Virus record (IMG/VR): IMGVR_UViG_3300042453_005404
Location: 124,001-188,000 of that record
Reading direction: 5' to 3' (one strand)
Length of the DNA stretch: 64,000 bases
The translations under genes and the position numbers were made by a program. Below are positions 2,643 to 51,795 of this stretch, piece after piece. The notes beneath the pieces are model-generated. The model was not told the DNA's origin and made no database searches. It saw only the letters and a list, made by a program, of their open reading frames with translations. Every line of letters starts with the position of its first letter. Position 1 is the first letter of the stretch.

Positions 2643-2972
2643 ATGGAACACGTTTTGAGCACAAAAAGCGTAAGTCACCAACTCAAGATTGGTGGGTTGC
2701 ACCAAGTCAATAGAAATATCTGGGTTATGTATGCTTCATATTCTGAAGCAGAGAATGCTTCAATCGCAACGATTGACCCAAAAGCTTTTGCTGCTTTCTC
2801 TTCTATTCTTAAAGGAAACATTCGCTATCTTAAGCCAAACGAAAGATTTGTTGCGTTGGAAGATACAAACCATATTGTAAAGCTTCTTTCAGAAGATGGT
2901 GAAGTAAGATATATTTCCGTGGCCAGCGAACGATATCTCAATAACTCGATTTCCTTTGTAAAGGTTCGATAA
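2643..2972 (+). CDS. small beta-barrel (SH3-like) paralog family member
   Basis: LKIGGL...FVALE...KLLSEDGEV pattern shared with downstream paralogs; ATG at 2643. Confidence 0.6.
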   Translation: MEHVLSTKSVSHQLKIGGLHQVNRNIWVMYASYSEAENASIATIDPKAFAAFSSILKGNIRYLKPNERFVALEDTNHIVKLLSEDGEVRYISVASERYLNNSISFVKVR

Positions 2973-4148: not shown

Positions 4149-4430
4149 ATGAAATATTTTAAAATCGGTAAGCTTTATACTTTAAATCTTCCGGGTACTC
4201 GACATTTGGGAGCTGCTCTATTTGCATTTCGTGATCCGCAAAAAGATCATATGGGAAATCTGACCGGCGAAGATATTGCGAAAAATGATGTTTTCGTTTT
4301 GTTGGAGTATTGCAACTTTCCTTACTCGGTTCAACAACACAGACTTCATGTCCTCACCAAAAACGGAACAACAGGTTGGTTAACACTATCAAACGTTTTG
4401 ACTGATTATATGGTTCCAGCTAGTATGTAA
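4149..4430 (+). CDS. SH3-like paralog family member
   Basis: KIGKLY...FVLLE...VLTKNGTTGW. Confidence 0.7.
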   Translation: MKYFKIGKLYTLNLPGTRHLGAALFAFRDPQKDHMGNLTGEDIAKNDVFVLLEYCNFPYSVQQHRLHVLTKNGTTGWLTLSNVLTDYMVPASM

Positions 4431-4432
4431 TC

Positions 4433-4717
4433 ATGAAAATCACCGAGCTAAAGATTGGTAAAATCTACACGTACAGAGGAGATCCTAACCTTGCTGTGTA
4501 TGCAACACCAGAATTGTTCAACACCAAAAAAGTTGGTAGAATATATCCAATGGATAACATTGTGGTGCTAGCAACAATAAAGGAGTTTGCGTATTGTTGG
4601 ATTCAAGTGCTTTCCGCAAACGGGATTGTTGGTTGGTTTGTCTGGAACATAGACGGACGAGCACCACAAGATGTTGATCGTTACTTTATTGAGGAGATAA
4701 CATCACAGTATGCATGA
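4433..4717 (+). CDS. SH3-like paralog family member
   Basis: KIGKIY...VVL...VLSANGIVGW. Confidence 0.7.
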   Translation: MKITELKIGKIYTYRGDPNLAVYATPELFNTKKVGRIYPMDNIVVLATIKEFAYCWIQVLSANGIVGWFVWNIDGRAPQDVDRYFIEEITSQYA

Positions 4718-4958
4718 AACAATCTATTCAATCGATATCGGTAAGCTGTACAGAACCCCACTTTACAACAAAGTGGCACTCACAATCTCTAGCGAAGAAG
4801 ACTCCGCAGAATGCGGCTTCTTGCATCCAGATGAATGGTTTGTGCTGCTCGATAAAAACGTTTCAAGGCATTCAGCAAAAATCCTAACACCTAACGGCGA
4901 GGTGGGCTGGGTACAATGGTACAGTGGCACACGGTTCGAACAACCAGATGAAGAATAA
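4710..4958 (+). CDS. SH3-like paralog family member
   Basis: DIGKLY...FVLLD...KILTPNGEVGW. Confidence 0.7.
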   Translation: MHETIYSIDIGKLYRTPLYNKVALTISSEEDSAECGFLHPDEWFVLLDKNVSRHSAKILTPNGEVGWVQWYSGTRFEQPDEE

Positions 4959-5594: not shown

Positions 5595-5966
5595 ATGAAG
5601 AACGAAGCAAACAGCTCCTCTCGCTACTGGAACCACAATCATCCCCGTGCCTTTGAAGGCATGAAGATGCGTGCTCCAGAGCGCAATCTCACTCTCCCGT
5701 GTCCCATCTGCAAAGGTCACGGTGCCTTCCATCTCTCGCATAACGACACTAACAACGGGTGTTATCCCTACTTCGATGCCTCTTGTGGACAGTGCAACGG
5801 TTGGGGTTACGTCAATCCCAACTCCATCGATGCTACCTGCATCCATGAATGGAAGGGGCTTACCTACGAGGAATCAAAGGCTCGTAACCTGTACACCGCT
5901 CGCAGCTTCTCTAACTGCGTCTGCATCCACTGCAACACCGTGATGGGTGTGGACTCCAGCGATTGA
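5595..5966 (+). CDS. DnaJ-type CxxCxGxG zinc-finger protein
   Basis: CPICKGHG, CGQCNGWG, plus CxHxW...CxHC. Confidence 0.7.
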   Translation: MKNEANSSSRYWNHNHPRAFEGMKMRAPERNLTLPCPICKGHGAFHLSHNDTNNGCYPYFDASCGQCNGWGYVNPNSIDATCIHEWKGLTYEESKARNLYTARSFSNCVCIHCNTVMGVDSSD

Positions 5967-5986
5967 TTTCAGAAAGAGAGAAAGAG

Positions 5987-6205
5987 ATGCACCACATCAT
6001 GCACCACAACGACTTCTTTCGGATCTATGATGGAAACATCATCGATGCGGAAAGCTTCTATACGAGCATGGCTTGTGACCATGCCGATAGGATCGCCGCT
6101 CACAACGGCGAGCCTCGCATCGTTCTTGTCACCGAAAACGGCGAGGTTGAAACCTCGCTCCCTATCAATGGCAAGAACCATACATGCAACCGGTCTTGCC
6201 GATAA
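5987..6205 (+). CDS. hypothetical protein
   Basis: ATG at 5987 after the purine-rich leader TTCAGAAAGAGAGA (same leader at 8211). Confidence 0.55.
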   Translation: MHHIMHHNDFFRIYDGNIIDAESFYTSMACDHADRIAAHNGEPRIVLVTENGEVETSLPINGKNHTCNRSCR

Positions 6206-6206
6206 T

Positions 6207-6524
6207 ATGAACAATCTTCAAATCGGTAAGATGTACTTGGTTAAAGAGTGGTTTTGGCTTCTGTTTCCAACGAAAAAAGTGGCGGGGGAGGCCGTGGACC
6301 CGGAGGCGGACGAAGCTGCCGACAACAGTTTGGTGGAAGCGAGGCGTGATGCAAAATGGATAAGCAAAGATTATAACTGCAACGTTGTTGTTGTTGAAGA
6401 AAACACTTGCTTTGTCTTGCTTGAACAAGATGAAGTATATTTCAAGGTTCTTGACTCAAACGGTAACATTGGTTGGATTTATTGCTCTGATTTCTCTTGC
6501 TATTTCAAGATTGTGAAGGAATAA
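6207..6524 (+). CDS. SH3-like paralog with GC-rich variable insert (copy 1)
   Basis: MNNLQIGKMY...LFPTK-[variable]-YNCNV...LDSNGNIGWI. Confidence 0.8.
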   Translation: MNNLQIGKMYLVKEWFWLLFPTKKVAGEAVDPEADEAADNSLVEARRDAKWISKDYNCNVVVVEENTCFVLLEQDEVYFKVLDSNGNIGWIYCSDFSCYFKIVKE

Positions 6525-6530
6525 AGAACA

Positions 6531-6866
6531 ATGAACAATCTTCAACTCGGTAAGATGTACTGCATGAAACAGTATTTCCGGCTTCTGTTTCCAACGAAAG
6601 AACTGCTGGTGGCCTACGACGTGCTCAACGACGTGCTGGTTCGTCGGGCCGGGCGGGAAGGCGCTGGGGCGGCTCATGCATTGGCAACACGGTTAAGCGA
6701 ACATTACAACTGCAACGTTTCTTTTGTTGAACCAAACACTTGCGTTGTTTTGCTTGAAGTAGATGAAGATGAACGTTGCTATAAACTGCTTGACTCAAAC
6801 GGTAACATTGGTTGGATTTATTGTTGTGATGATTTCTCCAACTATTTCGAACTTGTAAAGGGATAA
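6531..6866 (+). CDS. SH3-like paralog with GC-rich variable insert (copy 2)
   Basis: flanks near-identical to copy 1. Confidence 0.8.
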   Translation: MNNLQLGKMYCMKQYFRLLFPTKELLVAYDVLNDVLVRRAGREGAGAAHALATRLSEHYNCNVSFVEPNTCVVLLEVDEDERCYKLLDSNGNIGWIYCCDDFSNYFELVKG

Positions 6867-6872
6867 AAAGCA

Positions 6873-7202
6873 ATGCAACTCGGCAAAATGTATTTGGTTA
6901 AAGAGTGGTTTTGGTTTCTTTATCCAACAAAAGAAATGGTGGCCGAGGCGTACACCTGCGCCGTGATCAACGTGCCCAACAGCACCCACATTTCCGTTTA
7001 CGCCCATGGAAAAGCAAAAACAATCGGTACAACCAAAAGTTGCAACGTTTATGTCGCTGAACCAAAAACTTGCGTTGTTCTTCTCGATCAACAAAAAACA
7101 GAACTAGGAAAGGTTTACCAAATCCTTAACTCAAACGGTAACATCGGTTGGATTCGTTGCCACGGCGCTTTCACAGACTATTTCGAAATAATCAACCAAT
7201 AA
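6873..7202 (+). CDS. SH3-like paralog with GC-rich variable insert (copy 3)
   Basis: flanks near-identical to copies 1 and 2. Confidence 0.8.
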   Translation: MQLGKMYLVKEWFWFLYPTKEMVAEAYTCAVINVPNSTHISVYAHGKAKTIGTTKSCNVYVAEPKTCVVLLDQQKTELGKVYQILNSNGNIGWIRCHGAFTDYFEIINQ

Positions 7203-7214
7203 ACTCAAAAACAT

Positions 7215-7490
7215 ATGCTAACAATCGCAATCAACGAAATCTCGTTCAATATCCCAGATAACTACGTCGAGTGGAATATCAGTTATAACATCCCAAACGC
7301 AGATAAACTTGCTACAAATCTAACACTTGCCCTAATCAATGCCATCGCCGCCCCCAACAATAACCAAGCATCCTATATCATGAACAAAGCCTTGAACAAT
7401 ACCAACGCCTCAAAACAAACTTGCGATACCGCTAAACATTACCTCAATATCGCTCGTAACCATAACTTTAACTTCAATATCAATATATAA
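7215..7490 (+). CDS. hypothetical Asn-rich protein
   Basis: 91-aa ORF with extreme A/C-rich, G-poor composition. Confidence 0.45.
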   Translation: MLTIAINEISFNIPDNYVEWNISYNIPNADKLATNLTLALINAIAAPNNNQASYIMNKALNNTNASKQTCDTAKHYLNIARNHNFNFNINI

Positions 7491-7715: not shown

Positions 7716-7785
7716 TAACCATGAGAAACCATAGGAAACCATAGGATATTATAAGAAACCATGGGAAACCATAGCAAACCATATG
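7716..7785 (+). repeat. tandem decamer array (about 7 units, consensus AAACCATAGG)
   Basis: TAACCATGAG AAACCATAGG AAACCATAGG ATATTATAAG AAACCATGGG AAACCATAGC AAACCATATG. Confidence 0.9.
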
Positions 7786-8454: not shown

Positions 8455-8541
8455 CAAAACCCTGTAAATCTAGGCTTTTAAGAAAAAAGAAAATAATCTT
8501 TAGAATATTGCCTTTGGGTGATATTCTAAGAGCATGAAGAA
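8455..8541 (+). promoter_or_regulatory. early promoter, direct-repeat copy 2
   Basis: same motif as 7925; TTTAGA(8499)-17-TATTCT-AAGAGC-ATG(8534). Confidence 0.85.
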
Positions 8542-9397
8542 GACGACGAACAAGGCTGCTGTGAAGACCACCACCAAGAAGACCACTGTGAAGAAGGCTG
8601 CTGTGAAGAAGACCACGAAGAAGACTGAAAACTCTGGCAATCATCGTTTGGCTCAAACCGTCGAGGCTGGCCGTTTCTCGGATATCAAGATCCCTGATGC
8701 GCTGCGTACCACGCTCAAGACTGGTTGGGAGTATATCGATGCTCTCTTCACTGGTGAGGGCATTCGTCCTTCGACCTGCTGCATGGTGACCGGTCTGCCC
8801 GGTGGCGGCAAGACCACGATCTCTCTCCAGCTTGCTAACAGCCTTGCAGAGCAGGGTCATGTGGTGCTCTACAATAGCTGCGAGGAGAGTGGTGCGCAGA
8901 TCAAGATGAAGCTTGAGAAGATGGAGTTTAACGCTCTTCTGGAGAGCAACAACGCTTACTTCTCCAGCTTCTACGATATCTCGGATATCCTTGATTTTGC
9001 CAACAAGGTTCGCAAGCAGCACAAGCTTGAGGCTGGTAAGGGTTTCTTCCTGTTCGTTGACTCGCTTCAGACGATTGAGCGTGCTTCGAAGGGTGCCGGT
9101 CGTCCTGCTGGCCCTGCGCAGCAGCAGTGCGATGCGATGTGGGACGTTGCTGGTTGGTGTAAGGAAAGCATGGCCGTTGCAATGATCATCGGTCAGGTTA
9201 CCAAGGATGGTACCTTCGCTGGCAAGCAGGAAGTCAAGCACGCCGTTGACTGTCACCTGCACCTTGCGATGGATACCGACAAGAAGTCGGAAACCTATCG
9301 TCAGCGTGTTGCCGAAATGCAGAAGAATCGGTTTGGGACAAGTGGCCTCTTCTTCCCCTACGATATCTCTAGCAAGGGTATCGAGTTCCAGCAGTAA
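8534..9397 (+). CDS. RadA/Sms-like RecA-fold ATPase with Lys/Thr/Ala-rich N-terminal tail
   Basis: Walker A GLPGGGKTT, EES, VDSLQT, GQVTKDGTFAG, KHAVD, KNRFG; no Zn finger or Lon-like domain. Confidence 0.85.
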   Translation: MKKTTNKAAVKTTTKKTTVKKAAVKKTTKKTENSGNHRLAQTVEAGRFSDIKIPDALRTTLKTGWEYIDALFTGEGIRPSTCCMVTGLPGGGKTTISLQLANSLAEQGHVVLYNSCEESGAQIKMKLEKMEFNALLESNNAYFSSFYDISDILDFANKVRKQHKLEAGKGFFLFVDSLQTIERASKGAGRPAGPAQQQCDAMWDVAGWCKESMAVAMIIGQVTKDGTFAGKQEVKHAVDCHLHLAMDTDKKSETYRQRVAEMQKNRFGTSGLFFPYDISSKGIEFQQ

Positions 9398-9634: not shown

Positions 9635-9773
9635 CCCCGCCAGCAATCCCTTATGGCCCCCCTATATCTACCCACCCTAGGGTATTATGTGATACCCCCA
9701 TAGGCCCCCCTTATTCAGATAGACCCCCCTTACCCCATAGGCCCCCACGTTTGACCCCCGGCCCCCGTAGGCC
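9635..9773. repeat. C-tract block (G-tracts on the minus strand) with CCCCATAGGCCCCC sub-repeats
   Basis: 12 runs of 3 or more C in about 135 nt of non-coding DNA. Confidence 0.8.
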
Positions 9774-9904
9774 ATGATATGCTAGGGTACGAGCACGACG
9801 AGGGGCTTAGCCCACGCATCTCGCACAAGATTTATTTTTTAAAACTCTTTAAGGGTTTCAAAATTTTTTTTCTGGGAAAAAATTTTTGGGGAATTTTTTT
9901 GGTA

Positions 9905-21264: not shown

Positions 21265-23061
21265 TCAGTTGATTTGTTTTGTCAACTTACTCAACAACTT
21301 ATTCCAAATCAAAGCTTCGGTCATCATGTTTTTCAAATGCATTATAGCTTGTGATTTAACTGTTGAATTTTTGTCCTTTGCCAATGTCTGAACAATCTCT
21401 TTGGTTATATTCGGATTCTGTAAAAGATATAACTTCAACGAGTAGTTGGGTGATTTAGTAAAAGTCTTTAGAATTGCAGGTGGAGTTTCTTGATTTCGAA
21501 CAATTGATTTTTGCACATCTTCGTCTGGATCTTGTGCAAGTTTAGTAAAAAGTTCTAATGTAAGTTTAGGATTTAGTGCAACTGATTTTCGTATCATGTA
21601 GTCTTTGTGGTTTGAGTAAACATTCAAAATATTCAATGGTGTATTTTGATTTTTACCAATCTCCATTCTAACTTCTTGGTTTTTTGTAGCTTTAGCTATA
21701 AATGCTATTGTCTCTGGTAAAGTATTTCGATTCTTTGCGATTGCAAGATGAATATATTGTGCGGAGGAAGCAGGAACTTTCTTTCTTGCAAGTCTGTCTA
21801 ACACTTCGCTTGGAGCATTTGGATTATTCGCAATACCAGTCATAAAAGCTGGATCTTCTTTGTTGACAAGAGTCATTACCAGTTCGGGTGATATACTTGG
21901 ATTCCTTGCTGCGGAATGTCGGATACCAGCATCTGGATCGTTCAAAAGCTTTTCCAGCTCGGCTGCTGGTAGTTTTTCATTTTCTGCTGCTTGTCTTCTA
22001 ACATTTAAATCTTTATCGTGAACTAAAACAGTCACAGCTTCTGGTGACATATCAAATCTCAAAGCTGATCTAATAAATTTTTGCCGCAGATTCTGACCGT
22101 TTTCATCATCAGCGAAACTATTAATTTTTGTTTCGAAAGCTTTTGCGTTTTGAACTAGTCTTATAAACTCTTCTTTTGCAGGATGTTGACCTTCTAAGCT
22201 TTCTGCTTTTTCCTGCATTATTCCAAGAAACTTATTTGCCAAATCTTTTCCAACAACTTGCTCAAACTTTTTCTTGGTAAAGCCTTCGTTGTCCGCATTA
22301 ACAGTAATATTCCCAGAACCTAGATCGAATCTTGGTTCGCCATTAATAAAACCAACACTCATTTTAGCATATGGGTCTTCGTTAGCGTTTACACCTTTCT
22401 TAACAACATAAAACAAAATAGTGTCTTGATCTGGATCATTAACATATTGAAGAAATAGGTTAGATTCATCGGGTCTGGTAGTACACCATACAGTATCTCT
22501 TCTGCCACCTGTTTTGCCAATCTCGCAGCTGGCTTCAGTTGTATGTGGCATATAAACAACCCAACCATTTTCTTCCGCAAGCTTACCAAATTTCTCTTCT
22601 GAACCAGCCATTTCCTCAGAAGAAACTTTTTGGTTAAGTTGTTGGTTTAGCTGTTCAATATTTTCTAACTTGTCAAGAAAGTTTGGCTCAAAGTTTTCTT
22701 TGTTTTTTTGCAAAGAAAGAAGAGGTGCAATATAATCTTCAAGAACTTGTCGAAAGCTCAGATCTAGCCGACGAAGTTGTTTTGTTAACCATTGAATATA
22801 TGGAGCTTTTAAGTTTTTACTTTTGGCTATTTCAACAGATTTGTAGAGAGCTTCTAGTTGTGGAAAAGAAAGCTTGGTTAAATCCTTTGCTTCTGGATGT
22901 AACAAGGCATTGTATTTCGTTGTCAAATCTTTGAAATACTGCTCTGCTTGTGTCTTTTGCTCGTCTGTTATGTCTGTGTTTTTACTTTTCCAAACATCGA
23001 TTGGAGCTTCGGTGAGAAGTATTTGTTTGATTATAGCCTTAAGAATTTGTCTTTGATTCAT
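21265..23061 (-). CDS. tagged protein with PcfJ-like domain and LRV/HEAT-like repeats
   Basis: PxTxEASCxxG...WCTT; repeated AxNPNxPxExLxxL. Confidence 0.65.
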   Translation of the reverse strand: MNQRQILKAIIKQILLTEAPIDVWKSKNTDITDEQKTQAEQYFKDLTTKYNALLHPEAKDLTKLSFPQLEALYKSVEIAKSKNLKAPYIQWLTKQLRRLDLSFRQVLEDYIAPLLSLQKNKENFEPNFLDKLENIEQLNQQLNQKVSSEEMAGSEEKFGKLAEENGWVVYMPHTTEASCEIGKTGGRRDTVWCTTRPDESNLFLQYVNDPDQDTILFYVVKKGVNANEDPYAKMSVGFINGEPRFDLGSGNITVNADNEGFTKKKFEQVVGKDLANKFLGIMQEKAESLEGQHPAKEEFIRLVQNAKAFETKINSFADDENGQNLRQKFIRSALRFDMSPEAVTVLVHDKDLNVRRQAAENEKLPAAELEKLLNDPDAGIRHSAARNPSISPELVMTLVNKEDPAFMTGIANNPNAPSEVLDRLARKKVPASSAQYIHLAIAKNRNTLPETIAFIAKATKNQEVRMEIGKNQNTPLNILNVYSNHKDYMIRKSVALNPKLTLELFTKLAQDPDEDVQKSIVRNQETPPAILKTFTKSPNYSLKLYLLQNPNITKEIVQTLAKDKNSTVKSQAIMHLKNMMTEALIWNKLLSKLTKQIN

Positions 23062-31284: not shown

Positions 31285-31360
31285 TGGCTCCGCAAGTAGG
31301 GCTCGAACCTACAACCTAGCGGTTAACAGCCGCTCGCTACTGCCATTGAGCTATTGCGGA
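31285..31360 (-). tRNA. tRNA-Asn(GTT)
   Basis: cloverleaf, loop CTGTTAA, encoded CCA. Confidence 0.95.
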
Positions 31361-31378
31361 ATACGTATTTCTACGTAG

Positions 31379-31452
31379 TGGGTTGTGAGGGGGTCGAACC
31401 CTCGACCAAAAGGTTAAAAGCCTTCTGCTCGTACCAACTGAGCTAACAACCC
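31379..31452 (-). tRNA. tRNA-Lys(TTT)
   Basis: cloverleaf, loop CTTTTAA. Confidence 0.95.
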
Positions 31453-31462
31453 GTATTTTTAG

Positions 31463-31536
31463 TAGGCATGTCGGGGCTTGAACCCGAAACCTTTCGATTA
31501 TAAGTCGAATGCTCTAACCAGTTGAGCTACACGCCC
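31463..31536 (-). tRNA. tRNA-Ile(TAT)
   Basis: cloverleaf, TTCGA-CTTATAA-TCGAA. Confidence 0.9.
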
Positions 31537-31596
31537 GTTTCGTCTTTACCCTACTCTTATAATCTACCATCCTATATTATGATTCTCAAACTATTT

Positions 31597-31767
31597 TTAC
31601 TTTTTCTCGTTTGCCGCATCTTCTAGTATCTTTGCGGCATGATAACACAAGAATAGTAGATCTTGGGAAAAGTGTTTACCTAAACCTTCAGCGATTTGCT
31701 GTTGATTGTGCCCATACCGTATACGAGCTCTTATTGCTTTAATGCATTCATCAATGTCAGTATTCAT
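31597..31767 (-). CDS. small hypothetical protein
   Basis: MNTDIDECIKAIRARIRYG...; starts just after tRNA-Val. Confidence 0.5.
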   Translation of the reverse strand: MNTDIDECIKAIRARIRYGHNQQQIAEGLGKHFSQDLLFLCYHAAKILEDAANEKK

Positions 31768-31769
31768 AG

Positions 31770-31841
31770 TACAAGCAACAGGATTTGAACCTGTGACCTT
31801 CACCTTGTAAGGGTGACACTCTACCGCTGAGTTATGCTTGT
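31770..31841 (-). tRNA. tRNA-Val(TAC)
   Basis: cloverleaf, TCACC-CTTACAA-GGTGA. Confidence 0.9.
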
Positions 31842-31861
31842 AAATAAAACAAGTTCGGGAA

Positions 31862-32251
31862 CTAAACTTGATAGGTTATAACTTCATCCGGTAATACCAG
31901 TTTTTCCATTTCTGGAAACGAGCTCACAATCAGCCGCACGTCAACCAGTATATTTTTGGGTTCTACTGTTGCTACCTTGACATATATTGGTGGGCCTTCA
32001 AAAAAGCTGTCGATTACCATTTTCCAATCTGGCAGCCATGACAAAAGTTGTTTTTGTGGTTCTGATTCGATATTTTGAACATATCGAAATAGCGTTTTTG
32101 GTTTACTGGGTCTATATGCTTCAAGCTCTTTGATAACTGCCGGAGGTGGCAATCCTCTTGGTGCGTACTCCGTCCAATGTTGTAGCCATTTTTTAGTTTC
32201 TTCCGATAACGGGTTATCTTGTACGTCAAACAATATGGATTCTAACAGCAT
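31862..32251 (-). CDS. tagged putative ADP-ribosyltransferase (R-S-E-like) inside the tRNA cluster
   Basis: MLLESILFD; TLFRY...LLSW...ILVD...DEVI. Confidence 0.5.
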   Translation of the reverse strand: MLLESILFDVQDNPLSEETKKWLQHWTEYAPRGLPPPAVIKELEAYRPSKPKTLFRYVQNIESEPQKQLLSWLPDWKMVIDSFFEGPPIYVKVATVEPKNILVDVRLIVSSFPEMEKLVLPDEVITYQV

Positions 32252-32305
32252 ACAGCTATATATAGTATCTGTAATATACATTACAAACGAAATTCGAAAA
32301 AGAAG

Positions 32306-32377
32306 CGATCCCAACGGGGTTCGAACCCGTATGACAAGATTGAAAATCTTGTATCCTAACCGTTAGATGATGGGACC
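32306..32377 (-). tRNA. tRNA-Glu(TTC)
   Basis: cloverleaf, CAAGA-TTTTCAA-TCTTG. Confidence 0.93.
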
Positions 32378-32381
32378 AGAG

Positions 32382-32464
32382 TGGGCAGTGAAGGATTTGC
32401 ACCTACGAAGCCCGAAGGCAACAGATTTACAGTCTGCTCTCGTTGACTACTTGAGTAACTGCCC
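32382..32464 (-). tRNA. tRNA-Tyr(GTA)
   Basis: long variable arm, loop CTGTAAA. Confidence 0.92.
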
Positions 32465-32472
32465 AGAAACAG

Positions 32473-32557
32473 AGGAGAGTGTGAGATTCGAACTCACGGA
32501 CGGTTTCCCGCCTTCAGTTTTCAAGACTGACGTAATAGACCGCTCTACCAACTCTCC
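32473..32557 (-). tRNA. tRNA-Ser(TGA)
   Basis: long variable arm, loop CTTGAAA. Confidence 0.92.
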
Positions 32558-32591
32558 AAAACTATTCTATTGTCACAGAATCAATCGTTAG

Positions 32592-32665
32592 TCGGGGTAA
32601 AAGGATTCAAACCTTTGACCCTTCGCTCCCAAAGCGAATGCTCTATCAGACTGAGCTACACCCCG
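32592..32665 (-). tRNA. tRNA-Pro(TGG)
   Basis: CGGGGTG acceptor, loop TTTGGGA. Confidence 0.92.
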
Positions 32666-32862
32666 TTGTTTATCCGACCAAGTGATATGTTGTTTTGTAT
32701 CCTACTCGTTTTATTGTTCAATGTCCAAATCTCACCATTATTCATTGCACATACATACAACAAATCATGTTCTTGTGAGTAATCGATAACTAAAAAAGCG
32801 TATCCTTTCATTTGATCTGATACACGGATTATTGGTATCGTTGGATTTAGTTGAAGCATCAT
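32656..32862 (-). CDS. small phage protein (QLNPTIP...IDYSQEHDL)
   Basis: motif I recall as common in phages; 3' end overlaps the start of tRNA-Pro. Confidence 0.65.
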   Translation of the reverse strand: MMLQLNPTIPIIRVSDQMKGYAFLVIDYSQEHDLLYVCAMNNGEIWTLNNKTSRIQNNISLGRINNGV

Positions 32863-32866
32863 TTAG

Positions 32867-32947
32867 TGCAAGCGACGGGACTTGAACCCGTATGCCCGAA
32901 GGCGAGAGATTTTAAGTCTCCTGTGTATGCCATTCCACCACGCTTGC
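32867..32947 (-). tRNA. tRNA-Leu(TAA)
   Basis: variable arm, loop CTTAAAA. Confidence 0.93.
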
Positions 32948-32951
32948 AGAG

Positions 32952-33034
32952 TGCCCTCGACCAGACTTGAACTGGTACGCTCGTAAGAGCGGGAGATTTT
33001 GAGTCTCCTATGTCTGCCATTCCACCACAAGGGC
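32952..33034 (-). tRNA. tRNA-Leu(CAA)
   Basis: variable arm, loop CTCAAAA. Confidence 0.93.
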
Positions 33035-48721: not shown

Positions 48722-48798
48722 TGGAGCCCATTGTCGGATTTGAACCAACGACATCAACTTTACAAAAGTTGCGCTCTAGCCAACTGAGCTAAACGGGC
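48722..48798 (-). tRNA. tRNA-Thr(TGT)
   Basis: cloverleaf, CAACT-TTTGTAA-AGTTG, encoded CCA. Confidence 0.93.
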
Positions 48799-48801
48799 TT
48801 A

Positions 48802-48873
48802 TATCACTCAAAGGATTTTCACCTTTATCTTTCCTCTAACAAAGAGGGGCTTTGAAAGTTAAGCTAGAGTGAT
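48802..48873 (-). ncRNA. non-canonical tRNA-Thr(TGT)-like RNA
   Basis: acceptor ATCACTC/GAGTGAT, D-stem GCTT/AAGC, CCTC-TTTGTTA-GAGG, T-arm AAAGG-TGAAAAT-CCTTT. Confidence 0.65.
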
Positions 48874-48888
48874 TATAATATCTATCTA

Positions 48889-49089
48889 CTAACGTTTCTG
48901 AACAAACTCGTAGAGGCTTTCAGCGGTACGCTTGATATCCTCAATCGTTGGGCATGGAAGCATAACTGGCGAACGATTCTCACGTTCTGCGCTAATACGC
49001 TCGATTTCCATTTCTGTGTGCCAACGCTCAAAAAGCATTTCCTTGCTTTCATTTAGCAAGGCATGACGAATCTCATAACCTGTTGACAT
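48889..49089 (-). CDS. small phage protein (YEIR..LL...P...I...A..LY.FV)
   Basis: AGGAG RBS preceded by an ACACAC tract. Confidence 0.7.
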   Translation of the reverse strand: MSTGYEIRHALLNESKEMLFERWHTEMEIERISAERENRSPVMLPCPTIEDIKRTAESLYEFVQKR

Positions 49090-49136
49090 ATAACTTCTCC
49101 TGTGTGTATGTGTGTGAAATCACTCGACTATTCGAG

Positions 49137-49210
49137 TGGTGGACCGTGGCAGAGTCGAACTGCCGAAAACTGGATGCAAACCAGCTATTTTCCCACTAAA
49201 TTAACGGCCC
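49137..49210 (-). tRNA. tRNA-Ala(TGC)
   Basis: G3:U70, loop TTTGCAT, encoded CCA. Confidence 0.9.
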
Positions 49211-49551: not shown

Positions 49552-49680
49552 GTGATATATTCTCTTTTGTTAACGTTGAAGATTCTGTAGCTCTTATTCG
49601 CTACATACATAGAATAGCATGGATATATTCTCAGCTAAAACTATTTATGAACGATCTAGTCAAAAAAGGAATCATACACA

Positions 49681-50220
49681 ATGCGTATTACTGTAAAACA
49701 ACTCAAACGTTTAATCAAAGAAGCTTTAAGAGAGTTACCACCAAAAATCGATCCAAGCACATACAAACCTAATAAATCAGAGCCGGTATGTGGATTGCTT
49801 GTGAATGGGGTATCTCGAAGCTCGTACACAACTCTAAAACAAGCAGAAGAAGTGGCAAAAGTTCTAATACAATCTGGTTACGATGTAGAGATTGTTGATT
49901 TTAAAGGACAGGGTACAGCGTCGGGTGGCTGGGAGGATTTTAGTGTTAGAGGAGCTGATGCGTACCTCACGAATCGAAGTGCAGAGGAGATAATGGAGAT
50001 CGTGGACGAGGAGGAGCGCATCGTCGGCCAGCCACGTCGTCGTGTACGAGCCGCCAGCACCCCCGCCCGCCCGCACCCCGACGACCTCGGTCCCTACCCC
50101 GGCGCTGGGCGGTACCGCAGCGCCGGGGAGATCTCCACGGGGTATATACCGGGGTACAACCCGCCGCCGCCGAGAAGGCAGATGGGTGTGAATGAAGGAC
50201 GATATCGCCGCAATAAATAA
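49681..50220 (+). CDS. tagged protein with GC-rich Pro/Arg-rich insert
   Basis: MRITVKQLKRLIKE; AAGGA RBS. Confidence 0.75.
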   Translation: MRITVKQLKRLIKEALRELPPKIDPSTYKPNKSEPVCGLLVNGVSRSSYTTLKQAEEVAKVLIQSGYDVEIVDFKGQGTASGGWEDFSVRGADAYLTNRSAEEIMEIVDEEERIVGQPRRRVRAASTPARPHPDDLGPYPGAGRYRSAGEISTGYIPGYNPPPPRRQMGVNEGRYRRNK

Positions 50221-50263
50221 AAAAAGATACTAGATATATATCAAGGATAGCAAGGAGCATACA

Positions 50264-50716
50264 ATGCGTATTACTGTAAAACAACTCAAACAACTTATTC
50301 GTGAAACTGTAGAAGATATCGATCCAATGGATTTAGAACGTCAAGCAGGAAATCTTCCATCAACAAAGGAAGATTTGTTTCAACTTTACAGCGATATGTA
50401 CAAAGAGATGTACGGCATTCGTCCACATTGGCTTAGAATGGATGAAGTGTCTGAAGATGAGCTGCGTGCGATGATCGAGCACTTAGAGCAACGTTACGAA
50501 AGAGAAATCGAAGCAAGAAAACGAGAAGCTGAAGAAGAAGAAAAATTCTATAAAAAACTTCGAATAGAACGTGAAAAAGCGGATAAGGAAAGAGCTGAAC
50601 TTGCTGCGATGGGTTATGAGGGCATGGAAGATCTAGAAAACCTCCCAAGCAGAAGTGGTATGGGTAGACGCCTTGCAGAGTCAATCAAAAAAGCTGTTCG
50701 TGATTCACTTAAATAA
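50264..50716 (+). CDS. tagged protein (YSDxYKExYGIRP motif)
   Basis: MRITVKQLKQLIRE; first 27 nt identical to the 49681 gene. Confidence 0.75.
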   Translation: MRITVKQLKQLIRETVEDIDPMDLERQAGNLPSTKEDLFQLYSDMYKEMYGIRPHWLRMDEVSEDELRAMIEHLEQRYEREIEARKREAEEEEKFYKKLRIEREKADKERAELAAMGYEGMEDLENLPSRSGMGRRLAESIKKAVRDSLK

Positions 50717-50727
50717 ATACCTTAAAA

Positions 50728-51795
50728 ATGAATCTGCACCTTCTTAGACTAATTTTCAAAGAAACCGTAGCTAGTATATTGGCTGAAGGAGGCTGGGATA
50801 CAACAGTCACACAGTCTACAGTCATTCGTCCATCTACAGTTAAACAAGCTCTTGTTGTAGCCAATAAACTTATCGATGGCTTCAATTCTTTTTTGGACGA
50901 AAAAGGAATACCACACGTTAGAATAGGAACACCTCTTGGTAGTTCCGCTTATCACGAAATAGATCCAGAAGACAAAATCTATGGAGATATTGATTTACAA
51001 CTTGTTGTGCCAGAACTTCCAGAACATGAAAAACTAACAATTAGTCAAATTCAAGGATACTGGGGTGATTTAATAAAAGAATATACTACCGAAGCAAATC
51101 TTAATTTTGTTCATGAAGATTCAGAATCTGGGCATCCGATTTTAAAAATCGGAGAAAATAAATGGGTTCAAGTAGACATGATTATTCATCAAGAGTCTGT
51201 AGAGCATTGGGGTAGATATCGTGCAACCCCAGAAAGAGGAGTTAAAGGATTGCTTATGGGCAATATGTTTTCTACTCTTGGTTCTTTGCTTGACATGAGT
51301 ATTCAACATTCGGGTGTTCAATATAAGCTTGGTATAAAGGATAAAACAAGAAAACCTTATTCAACAACACGCAGAGATTTTTCTATGGTAACTGTTACTA
51401 CAGACCCAGAAACTTTTGTTAAAGATATTTTTGATCATGAATATTCAATGATTACTGGCAAAGATCCAAGAAGAGCTAAAATCGATAAACTTCTTTCTCA
51501 ATATCAGGGTGTTAATGTTGACAACATTAAAGTTGAAACTTTAGTTAAGGCTGTAAAAGGTTTGGCTGCAAGCTTTGCTATGAACAATATGTACGGCAAA
51601 GGTTCTCTTGCCAAATACAGTTCACCAGAACAGTTTTTGTCTGAATTTATGCGGGTTTATGAAGGTAAAGCTGAGAAAGATATTAACTCAGCTAAGAGAG
51701 ACAAAGCAACAACTCCAGAAGCTATTGCCAGAGCAGCGAGTGACAGAGAAAAGGTTCGTTCGGGTCTTGAAATGGTTAAACAATTGTTTGGCTGA
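50728..51795 (+). CDS. tagged Pol-beta-superfamily nucleotidyltransferase
   Basis: LGSS...GDIDL...VQVD. Confidence 0.7.
   Translation: MNLHLLRLIFKETVASILAEGGWDTTVTQSTVIRPSTVKQALVVANKLIDGFNSFLDEKGIPHVRIGTPLGSSAYHEIDPEDKIYGDIDLQLVVPELPEHEKLTISQIQGYWGDLIKEYTTEANLNFVHEDSESGHPILKIGENKWVQVDMIIHQESVEHWGRYRATPERGVKGLLMGNMFSTLGSLLDMSIQHSGVQYKLGIKDKTRKPYSTTRRDFSMVTVTTDPETFVKDIFDHEYSMITGKDPRRAKIDKLLSQYQGVNVDNIKVETLVKAVKGLAASFAMNNMYGKGSLAKYSSPEQFLSEFMRVYEGKAEKDINSAKRDKATTPEAIARAASDREKVRSGLEMVKQLFG

What the first reader, a model, noticed from the sequence alone, without database searches (positions are those of the whole stretch)
6279..7005. GC-rich hypervariable inserts inside otherwise near-identical AT-rich paralogs
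The three genes at 6207-7202 have near-identical flanks (TTTCCAACGAAA... and AACTGCAACGTT...GACTCAAACGGTAACATTGGTTGGATT). The 60-75 nt between the flanks (about 6279-6347, 6603-6675, 6938-7005) is unalignable, varies in length while keeping frame, and is abruptly GC-rich with mostly C/G-ending codons. Uniform drift would not give this pattern. It suggests a targeted diversification mechanism: DGR-like A-to-N mutagenesis, capture of host-like sequence, or loop-restricted recombination. No reverse transcriptase or template repeat is visible in this window.
Basis: partly seen in the sequence, partly recalled or inferred. Interest (0 to 1): 0.66.

Follow-up and report, generated by a model that had tools for sequence, protein, structure and literature searches.

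The report
Phage SH3-like gene family, GC-rich loops
Three neighbouring small genes of a 260-kb phage belong to a family of at least 22 copies that share conserved ends but each carry a different G- or C-rich middle piece; the copies are shuffled by ordinary recombination rather than rewritten by a dedicated mutator, and why the middle piece is so GC-rich remains unexplained.

Summary
The three genes (6207-6524, 6531-6866, 6873-7202) have flanks of 33-39% GC. Their in-frame inner segments (6279-6350, 6603-6683, 6936-7013) have 58-69% GC and GC3 of 0.74-0.81. The 260,466-bp phage genome holds 22 such copies plus about 15 insert-less relatives, predicted to be SH3-like.

Synonymous codons flip inside each gene (Ala GCA to GCG, Gly GGT to GGG). 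Eighteen copies are G-rich on the coding strand and four are C-rich.

A DGR is ruled out: there is no reverse transcriptase, no second copy of any insert, insert lengths run from 39 to 81 nt, and T is depleted as well as A. No foreign source was found.

Other strains carry identical inserts in g2, g3 and one further copy, while neighbouring copies are swapped as whole alleles. Copy number at this locus is 3, 4 or 6. Flank segments have discordant nearest relatives.

Best reading: a tandem array reshuffled by gene conversion and unequal crossing-over, with a weakly constrained low-complexity loop that changes by substitutions, small duplications and patches. The strand-specific G or C codon bias is unexplained. 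No read-level test could be run.

The parts
6207..6524 (+). Paralog g1 (105 aa from the ATG at 6207). Gene callers on other contigs start it upstream, giving 118 aa.
6279..6350 (+). g1 GC-rich insert, 72 nt, GC 0.68, GC3 0.75. It encodes 24 aa rich in A, E and D.
   Evidence: In strain L015 it has 3 nonsynonymous substitutions against 0 in 146 nt of adjoining flank. In strain L013 the whole allele is replaced.
6531..6866 (+). Paralog g2 (111 aa). Modelled as a beta hairpin, three helices, then an SH3-like barrel.
6603..6683 (+). g2 GC-rich insert, 81 nt, GC 0.69, GC3 0.74. It contains a 12-nt near-tandem duplication (DVLN/DVLV) and one copy of the octamer GCTGGTGG.
   Evidence: It is 100% identical in strain L013, while the C flank of g2 has 6 changes.
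6873..7202 (+). Paralog g3 (109 aa)
6936..7013 (+). g3 GC-rich insert, 78 nt, GC 0.58, GC3 0.81. Here C exceeds G.
   Evidence: It is 100% identical in L013. Contig L006 switches to another copy exactly at 6936.
6512..6530 (+). The last codons of g1 (…AAG GAA TAA) overlap a Shine-Dalgarno-like AAGGA for g2. The same arrangement precedes g3 at 6854-6872. This is part of why the 3' ends are conserved as DNA (inference).
   Evidence: read from the sequence
2643..2972 (+). Distant paralog with an insertion of similar length at the same position but of ordinary composition (GC 0.30-0.50).
4149..4430 (+). Insert-less paralog of the wider family
4433..4717 (+). Insert-less paralog of the wider family
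4710..4958 (+). Insert-less paralog of the wider family

Best explanation
The three genes belong to a lineage-specific, tandemly arrayed family of small SH3-like proteins in a jumbo phage of about 260 kb. The genome has 22 insert-bearing copies in six clusters, all on one strand, plus about 15 insert-less relatives.

Each copy has conserved parts: an N-terminal beta hairpin, a third helix and a C-terminal barrel. Between them lies a translated, weakly constrained, low-complexity segment of 13-27 residues, rich in Ala, Gly and Arg (or Ala, Ser and Pro).

Shown here:
- The flanks are mosaics exchanged among copies up to 80 kb apart.
- Strains differ by replacement of whole alleles and by copy number.
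- Individual inserts are otherwise stable between strains.
- No retro-element or template exists.

Inferred:
- Homologous recombination (the phage encodes a RecA-like protein) keeps the flanks alike. It stops at, or carries along, the non-homologous insert.
- The insert itself drifts or diversifies by point substitutions, triplet slippage and small duplications, and occasional patch conversion.
- Its G-rich (NNG) or C-rich (GCC-type) codon make-up is inherited within each subfamily as a property of a self-perpetuating simple sequence.
- The variable helical segment sits where an SH3 RT loop would be. It probably gives each copy a different binding surface for host or rival targets.
For: Family and architecture.

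Codon flip within genes: Ala GCG 62/89 in inserts against GCA 22/39 in flanks; Gly GGG 26/39 against GGT 62/89; Val GTG 22/27 against GTT 106/164.

Inserts are translated: all 22 keep the frame without stops, as do about 50 metagenomic homologues.

No RT and no template copy.

Flank homogenisation and mosaicism: nearest neighbours of three flank segments agree in only 14 of 66 comparisons. Copies 80 kb apart share exact tracts of 69 and 63 nt. Fourfold-site divergence is 0-25% in the closest pairs, while their inserts are no more alike than shuffles.

Strain comparisons:
- Window 5800-7300 is 100% identical in six JGI contigs.
- In L013 the g2 and g3 inserts show 0 changes in 159 nt against 9 flank changes. 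g1 is replaced as a whole allele and there is one extra copy.
- L014 shows the same pattern at another cluster.
- A third strain has six copies at this locus.
- Protein alleles share an N flank plus insert but differ in their C flanks (P0045/P0046, P0007/P0011).

Slippage and duplication: TRF finds degenerate (GCC)n and a 24-nt tandem duplication in the C-rich group. Within-insert k-mer repeats exceed the codon-shuffled null.

Heritable asymmetry: the relative genome shows the same G or C asymmetry by subfamily, although its insert sequences are unrelated.

Fold: AF2 gives pLDDT 87.6 and pTM 0.80. Foldseek gives probability 0.97-0.99 to SH3 domains, but with weak E-values. Atlas leads point to SH3b.

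A RecA-like gene is present.
Against: The cause of the GC richness is not established. In the G-rich group, GCG is only 1.5-fold above a position-independent expectation, and its one-step neighbours are not enriched. A decayed-triplet origin is therefore supported only for the four C-rich copies.

The k-mer repeat excess is also seen in a flank control at k=5-6.

Two allele pairs show changes concentrated in the insert: 3 changes in 72 nt against 0 in 146 nt, and 9 substitutions plus one codon indel in about 33 nt. This fits relaxed or diversifying selection, but it would also fit a targeted process.

No read-level data could be obtained, so low-frequency within-population variation is untested.

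The SH3 assignment rests on a model with weak Foldseek E-values and no Pfam match. The function is pure inference.
Confidence: 0.6

Rival explanations
1. An active, locus-targeted diversification process that is not a DGR. Examples would be strand-specific synthesis or repair that writes G-rich (or, on the other strand, C-rich) tracts at a break between the conserved flanks, or programmed micro-gene-conversion among inserts.
For: The composition boundary is very sharp on both sides. The strand-specific third-position bias is G3 0.61 or C3 0.75, and it persists in a divergent genome although insert sequences have turned over. Two allele pairs have changes clustered in the insert. One patch resembles the neighbouring copy's insert (25/31, p=0.008).
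Against: Inserts are identical across six JGI contigs and in strains from other studies. Most between-strain change is whole-allele replacement. No RT, Y-family polymerase or CDA-type deaminase was found. Opposite asymmetries occur in clusters on the same strand only about 3-8 kb apart, which argues against a replication- or transcription-linked mutator.
Confidence: 0.12
2. The GC-rich tract is selected at the nucleic-acid level. It might act as a Chi-like recombination signal or a heterology barrier that shapes conversion tracts. It might be a run of rare codons that slows translation between two folding units. Or it might be a T-poor patch in a genome that may carry modified thymidine.
For: Synonymous sites carry the signal, which amino-acid selection alone cannot explain. 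G-rich pentamers such as GGCGG occur in 16 of 22 inserts (null 95th percentile 13). g2 holds GCTGGTGG. Phage tRNAs all read A/U-ending codons. Amidoligase and related genes lie beside the arrays.
Against: There is no excess RNA structure (mean z +0.14, none below -2), and a G4 motif occurs in only 3 of 22 inserts. No single motif is shared by all inserts. The host and its Chi sequence are unknown. The C-rich group would need the opposite orientation or a different signal.
Confidence: 0.15
3. Simple relaxed constraint: the flanks are held by purifying selection, the insert is a neutral linker, and no recombination or special process is needed.
For: Between the two divergent genomes the flanks are 67-81% identical in protein, like an ordinary enzyme at 76%, so a neutral linker would be randomised. 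A distant paralog has an ordinary-composition insertion at the same site.
Against: A neutral linker should drift to the genome's AT-rich composition, not to 58-85% GC with GC3 up to 0.96. Fourfold sites of the flanks are nearly identical in pairs whose inserts are unrelated. Mosaic flanks show recombination.
Confidence: 0.06
4. Capture of foreign (host or other phage) GC-rich DNA into the loop.
For: The inserts are compositionally foreign to the genome. The phage's A/U-decoding tRNA set hints at a host of higher GC content (inference).
Against: No blastn match in plasmids or phages. Inserts of one subfamily share in-frame motifs and one composition. The 5:1 or 0:33 G3/C3 ratios are, from general knowledge, unlike in-frame coding DNA of high-GC bacteria. 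All inserts keep the frame. Host genomes themselves were not searched.
Confidence: 0.04
5. Diversity-generating retroelement (adenine-directed mutagenic retrohoming).
For: Only the general look: variable segments between conserved DNA in a phage.
Against: No RVT_1 match, while the same search rings in 4 of 14 control genomes. No template repeat. Variable lengths, depletion of both A and T, an internal helical segment rather than a C-terminal CLec-type or Ig-type variable region, and stable inserts in other strains.
Confidence: 0.01

Closest known systems
Diversity-generating retroelements (e.g. Bordetella phage BPP-1 Mtd)
   Same: A phage-borne protein scaffold with a localised variable stretch between conserved DNA.
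   Different: No RT, no template repeat and no adenine-specific pattern. Lengths vary. There are 22 separate loci rather than one variable/template pair. The variable part is an internal helical segment of an SH3-like protein. Inserts are stable between strains.
PE_PGRS-type families (a conserved domain plus a polymorphic GC-rich repetitive sequence) in mycobacteria. This comparison is from general knowledge and was not tested here.
   Same: A multigene family in which a conserved module is joined to a Gly/Ala-rich, unusually GC-rich, slippage- and recombination-prone segment that differs between copies and strains.
   Different: Here the segment is short (13-27 aa) and internal, not obviously repetitive in most copies. 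It sits in a 40% GC phage genome and uses one-sided NNG or GCC codons. There is no homology.
Cassette or segmental gene-conversion systems and 'genomic accordions' (pilE/pilS, vlsE; poxvirus K3L arrays). From general knowledge.
   Same: Tandem or dispersed copies with conserved flanks that allow homologous exchange. Strains differ by swapped alleles and by copy number.
   Different: There is no single expression site with silent donors: all copies look like intact genes with their own start and ribosome-binding site. Exchange mostly moves whole alleles or flank segments, not just the variable part.
Cryptically simple sequence and alanine tracts built from one GCN codon (from general knowledge)
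   Same: In-frame length changes, single-codon dominance (GCC in four copies, GCG in eighteen), small tandem duplications, and composition kept while sequence turns over.
   Different: Most G-rich inserts are not detectably repetitive. The GCG-decay test was not specifically positive.
SH3 / SH3b domains
   Same: The predicted five-stranded barrel with a G-W motif matches SH3 folds. The variable part lies between the first strands, where the RT loop is.
   Different: No Pfam SH3 family is matched. Foldseek E-values are 0.03 or weaker. A three-helix insertion replaces the loop.

Membership tests
Diversity-generating retroelement | Reverse transcriptase gene near the target | tested here: not met
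   PF00078 six-frame search of the whole 260-kb record found 0 matches at E<=1. The control rang in 4 of 14 genomes.
Diversity-generating retroelement | Template repeat about 90% identical to the variable region | tested here: not met
   blastn-short of all 22 inserts against the genome found no second copy at E<=0.01.
Diversity-generating retroelement | Differences confined to adenines of the template; fixed length | tested here: not met
   There is no template to compare. Inserts range from 39 to 81 nt and are depleted in both A (0.15) and T (0.14).
Diversity-generating retroelement | Variation within a population at variable-region sites | tested here: inconclusive
   Assembled contigs from six samples are identical.
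SH3-like fold | Small five-stranded beta barrel | tested here: met
   AF2 model with pLDDT 87.6 and strands at 64-108. Foldseek probability is 0.97-0.99 to Pex13p, Abl and Csk SH3 domains, but with E-values of 0.03-0.1.
SH3-like fold | Sequence match to a curated SH3 family | tested here: not met
   No Pfam or PHROG family at E<=0.1, apart from a marginal phrog_10885 hit of unknown function.
Recombining (concerted-evolution) tandem gene family | Mosaic copies: different segments have different closest relatives | tested here: met
   14 of 66 nearest-neighbour comparisons are concordant. Distant copies share 69-nt and 63-nt exact tracts.
Recombining (concerted-evolution) tandem gene family | Allele replacement and copy-number change between strains | tested here: met
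   (whole-allele swaps). (3, 4 or 6 copies at this locus; differing second genes at the 110-kb cluster).
Simple-sequence (slippage) region | Detectable short tandem or triplet repeats | tested here: inconclusive
   Met for the four C-rich copies (TRF GCC period 3 and a 24-nt duplication). For the three window genes there is only a k-mer repeat excess at p of about 0.03 and one 12-nt duplication. The flank control is also elevated.
GC-biased gene conversion | Symmetric gain of G and C at silent sites | tested here: not met
   Fourfold sites show G:C of 168:34 in the G-rich group, and GCC 33 against GCG 0 in the C-rich group.
Translational bypass element (T4 gene 60 or mitochondrial byp type) | Insert need not keep the frame or be free of stops | tested here: not met
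   All 22 inserts and about 50 homologues are in frame and free of stops.

The most novel reading that the evidence does not exclude
The sharp-edged, strand-specific NNG (or NNC) codon make-up is kept within subfamilies even after the sequences have turned over. It could be the footprint of a so far undescribed RT-independent process that rewrites or patch-converts the loop of an SH3-like scaffold. That would give this phage lineage a library of about 20 binders with programmable loops.
Probability: 0.12. Interest if true: 0.85.

Novelty: new variant of a known kind. Interest (0 to 1): 0.55.

Why it matters
About one gene in ten of this jumbo phage belongs to one uncharacterised SH3-like family. 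The 22 copies with a variable loop look like a natural panel of small binders. They are reshuffled between strains and are probably aimed at host or competitor targets.

The switch of synonymous codon usage within a single gene, one-sided in G or C, is unusual and unexplained. It is a clean, testable case for asking how local composition islands arise in viral genomes.

For scanning work, it also shows that 'variable stretch between conserved flanks' in a phage need not mean a DGR. Gene conversion of the flanks together with a simple-sequence loop gives the same first impression.

Tried and rejected
- DGR: no RT, no template, wrong base pattern and variable lengths.
- Error-prone polymerase or deaminase: no Y-family polymerase or CDA-fold gene in the record.
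- RNA hairpin or attenuator: insert MFE z-scores average +0.14 and none is below -2.
- G-quadruplex: motif present in only 3 of 22 inserts.
- GC-biased gene conversion: the bias is strand-specific, G:C 5:1 or the reverse.
- Translational bypass: all inserts are in frame and open.
- Frameshift tolerance (all frames open): only 7 of 22 inserts are open in all three forward frames.
- Foreign capture: no blastn match in plasmids or phages.
- Decay from a pure GCG repeat in the G-rich group: not specifically supported.
- Relatives in IMG/VR by peptide patterns: none confirmed.
- Phage collection by blastn: none.
- Literature word searches: nothing relevant.
- RT search in the relative's full record: the record is not held.
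- An exact-pattern scan of genome collections with insert letters was left out, because it would have required typing sequence and had a low prior.
- The large representative protein search was not used. The word search had already shown that the family is unannotated and confined to related contigs.

Full report
**What is there**

The window is bases 124001-188000 of a single 260,466-bp virus record with 40% GC. The record encodes:
- a DnaE-type polymerase
- an SbcCD-like nuclease
- GroEL
- a T4-type large terminase
- an RNA ligase
- 13 tRNAs

It is therefore a jumbo phage.

At 6207-7202 lie three head-to-tail genes of 105, 111 and 109 codons. Their N-terminal 21-24 codons and C-terminal 57-62 codons align well. 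The stretch between does not align.

| Insert (window) | Length | GC | GC3 |
|---|---|---|---|
| 6279-6350 | 72 nt | 0.68 | 0.75 |
| 6603-6683 | 81 nt | 0.69 | 0.74 |
| 6936-7013 | 78 nt | 0.58 | 0.81 |

The flanks have 0.33-0.39 GC.

**The pattern is much larger than the finding**

A scan for 60-nt windows of at least 62% GC found 52 islands. More than twenty of these fall at about 300-nt spacing inside gene clusters.

Profile searches of all ORFs found 22 copies with the same architecture. All are on the + strand. They lie at these genome positions:
- 49556-50770
- 110129-111434
- 115506-116447
- 117466-118688
- 121361-122665
- 130207-131202 (the three window genes)

About 15 more distant copies mostly lack the insert, for example window 4149-4958. 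One distant copy at window 2643-2972 has an insertion at the same place with ordinary composition.

Across the 22 copies:
- Inserts are 39-81 nt, always in frame and without stops.
- Insert GC is 58-85% against 32-38% in the flanks.
- Insert GC3 is 0.60-0.96 against 0.29-0.41 in the flanks.

**The signal sits at synonymous sites and is one-sided**

Within one and the same gene the preferred codons flip:

| Amino acid | Inserts of the 18 G-rich copies | Flanks |
|---|---|---|
| Ala | GCG 62 of 89 | GCA 22 of 39 |
| Gly | GGG 26 of 39 | GGT 62 of 89 |
| Val | GTG 22 of 27 | GTT 106 of 164 |
| Leu | CTG 16 of 25 | CTT 104 of 189 |

In these 18 copies the third position is 61% G and 18% C. In the four copies at 121-123 kb it is 75% C and 4% G, with GCC 33 and GCG 0.

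A related but divergent genome is the ENA contig of 261,786 bp (locus L007). Its amidoligase is 76% identical in protein. It shows the same G-rich and C-rich subfamilies, although its insert sequences are unrelated.

Other GC islands in the genome are low-complexity Ala/Pro/Gly/Arg stretches in unrelated ORFs.

**Tests of the proposed mechanisms**

*DGR.*
- No RVT_1 match in six frames of the record.
- No insert has a second copy anywhere.
- Lengths vary, and A and T are equally depleted.
- CheckV rates the record 70% complete. However, its ends share 13 nt and the relative has nearly the same length, so a missing RT is unlikely.

*Foreign capture.*
- No blastn match in plasmids or phages.
- The one-sided third-position bias is, from general knowledge, unlike in-frame high-GC coding DNA.
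- Host genomes were not searched because the host is unknown.

*RNA structure or G-quadruplex.*
- Folding energies equal those of shuffles: mean z +0.14, none below -2.
- A G4 motif occurs in 3 of 22 inserts.

*GC-biased gene conversion.*
- Excluded by the G:C ratio of 168:34 at fourfold sites and its reversal in the other subfamily.

*Bypassing.*
- Excluded because every insert keeps the frame.

**What does change, and how**

Window 5800-7300 is identical in six JGI contigs from different samples. These samples may belong to one study.

*Strain L013, from a different ENA sample*:
- The region is about 94% identical overall.
- The g2 and g3 inserts are identical (0 changes in 159 nt), while their C-terminal flanks carry 6 and 3 changes.
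- g1 is replaced from about its 44th to its 295th base by a different allele. There the flanks are about 85% identical and the insert is unalignable. Both ends of the gene are identical.
- One extra paralog sits upstream.

*Cluster at 50 kb*:
- Contig L014 is identical through one copy, including its insert.
- The neighbouring copy is a different allele.

*Copy number and mosaic alleles:*
- A third strain has six copies where the window has three.
- At the 110-kb cluster, strains differ in which copy comes second.
- Protein alleles from metagenomes share an N flank plus insert but have different C flanks, or the reverse.

*Mosaicism within the genome*:
- The nearest relative of the N flank, the first half of the C flank and the second half agree in only 14 of 66 comparisons.
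- Copies 80 kb apart share exact tracts of 69 and 63 nt.
- In the closest pairs, fourfold sites differ by 0-25% while insert identity equals a shuffled null.

The near-identical flanks are therefore best explained by gene conversion and unequal crossing-over. The unrelated inserts are regions these exchanges do not homogenise. The phage has a RecA-like gene.

**How the inserts themselves change**

- Two allele pairs show small changes concentrated in the insert. One has three nonsynonymous substitutions in g1's insert against none in 146 nt of adjoining flank. The other has nine substitutions plus one codon indel within about 33 nt of the copy at 50456.
- That second patch resembles the insert of the neighbouring copy (25 of 31, p=0.008 against shuffles). 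Short patch conversion among inserts is therefore possible.
- The C-rich inserts are degenerate (GCC)n and include a 24-nt tandem duplication.
- g2 carries a 12-nt near-duplication.
- Within-insert k-mer repeats exceed a codon-shuffled null, although a flank control does too at k=5-6.
- Several G-rich inserts share an in-frame motif.
- For the G-rich group, a test of decay from a pure GCG repeat was not specifically positive.

I therefore regard slippage and simple-sequence dynamics as shown for the C-rich copies and only plausible for the others. The origin of the NNG bias remains unexplained.

**The protein**

An AlphaFold2 model of g2, built with 51 family sequences, has pLDDT 87.6 and pTM 0.80. 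It shows a beta hairpin, three helices (23-32, 34-42, 44-59) and then five strands.

The insert covers the first two helices and the start of the third. Confidence there drops to about 62.

Foldseek ranks SH3 domains (Pex13p, Abl, Csk) with probability 0.97-0.99 but E-values of 0.03-0.1. Among viral models, several SH3-containing cell-wall hydrolases and endolysins appear among mostly unnamed proteins. Atlas leads point to SH3b families. No Pfam or PHROG family is matched.

On this basis the variable segment replaces the RT loop of an SH3-like barrel. That would be a natural place for a specificity-determining surface. This, and any role in host takeover or counter-defence, is inference.

**Verdict**

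The DGR-like and capture readings are not supported. Recombination is supported, but as ordinary exchange among paralogs rather than a loop-restricted mechanism.

What remains unexplained is the sharp-edged, strand-specific, heritable codon bias of the loop. That leaves about a one-in-eight chance of an unknown targeted process.

Noticed in passing
window 49992-50211: The strongest GC island of the window: 220 nt at up to 83% GC. It lies inside an ORF at 49681-50220 (+) and encodes a Pro/Arg/Gly-rich low-complexity tail with mostly G/C-ending codons. It is unrelated to the SH3-like family.
   Followed up: partly
window 31285-33034 and 48722-49210: Two tRNA clusters on the minus strand (10 and 3 genes). 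Twelve anticodons pair with A/U-ending codons (UUU, UAU, UAC, UUC, UGA, UGG, UAA, UGU x2, UGC, plus GUU and GUA by wobble); Leu-CAA reads UUG. This hints at a host with higher GC content than the phage.
   Followed up: no
window 7717-7783: An intergenic 10-nt tandem repeat (AACCATAAGA-like, 6.7 copies; also read as a 20-nt unit) just downstream of the array.
   Followed up: no
window 9696-9820: An intergenic C-tract-rich region: a 19-nt unit (CCCCATAGGCCCCCCTTAT-like), 2.7 copies, 61-67% GC, downstream of the KaiC/DnaB-like ATPase gene at 8534-9397.
   Followed up: no
genome 42208-43530 (outside the window; loci L017, L018): A RecA-like gene in one 644-aa open frame. The RecA match is split by about 160 residues. 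A related contig carries a faint intein-splicing hit on its RecA gene, so this is possibly an intein.
   Followed up: no
L006 (JGI 3300044858 contig), junction at window 6936: This contig follows the window through g2 and the N flank of g3. Exactly at the start of g3's insert it continues as the copy at genome 117466 (99% identical). The 67-nt flank is identical in both copies, so this is either an assembly chimera or a real recombinant.
   Followed up: partly
genome ends (1-13 and 260454-260466): The two ends of the record share 13 identical bases. A relative is 261,786 bp long. The record may therefore be a complete, circularly permuted genome despite the 70% completeness estimate.
   Followed up: partly
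window 5595-5966: A small Cys-rich ORF with a weak DnaJ-type CXXCXGXG zinc-finger match (E 4e-4, below the Pfam cut-off), just upstream of the array.
   Followed up: no
window 21265-23061: A 598-aa protein with LRV/HEAT repeats next to the DnaE polymerase gene.
   Followed up: no
L007 8056-9123, L020-L022, genome 109041-110117: An Amidoligase_2 gene directly precedes one array in all strains. The encoded protein is 76% identical between the two divergent genomes. Together with a DNA ligase and an AAA_33 kinase-like gene nearby, it recalls thymidine-hypermodification gene sets (from memory, untested).
   Followed up: no
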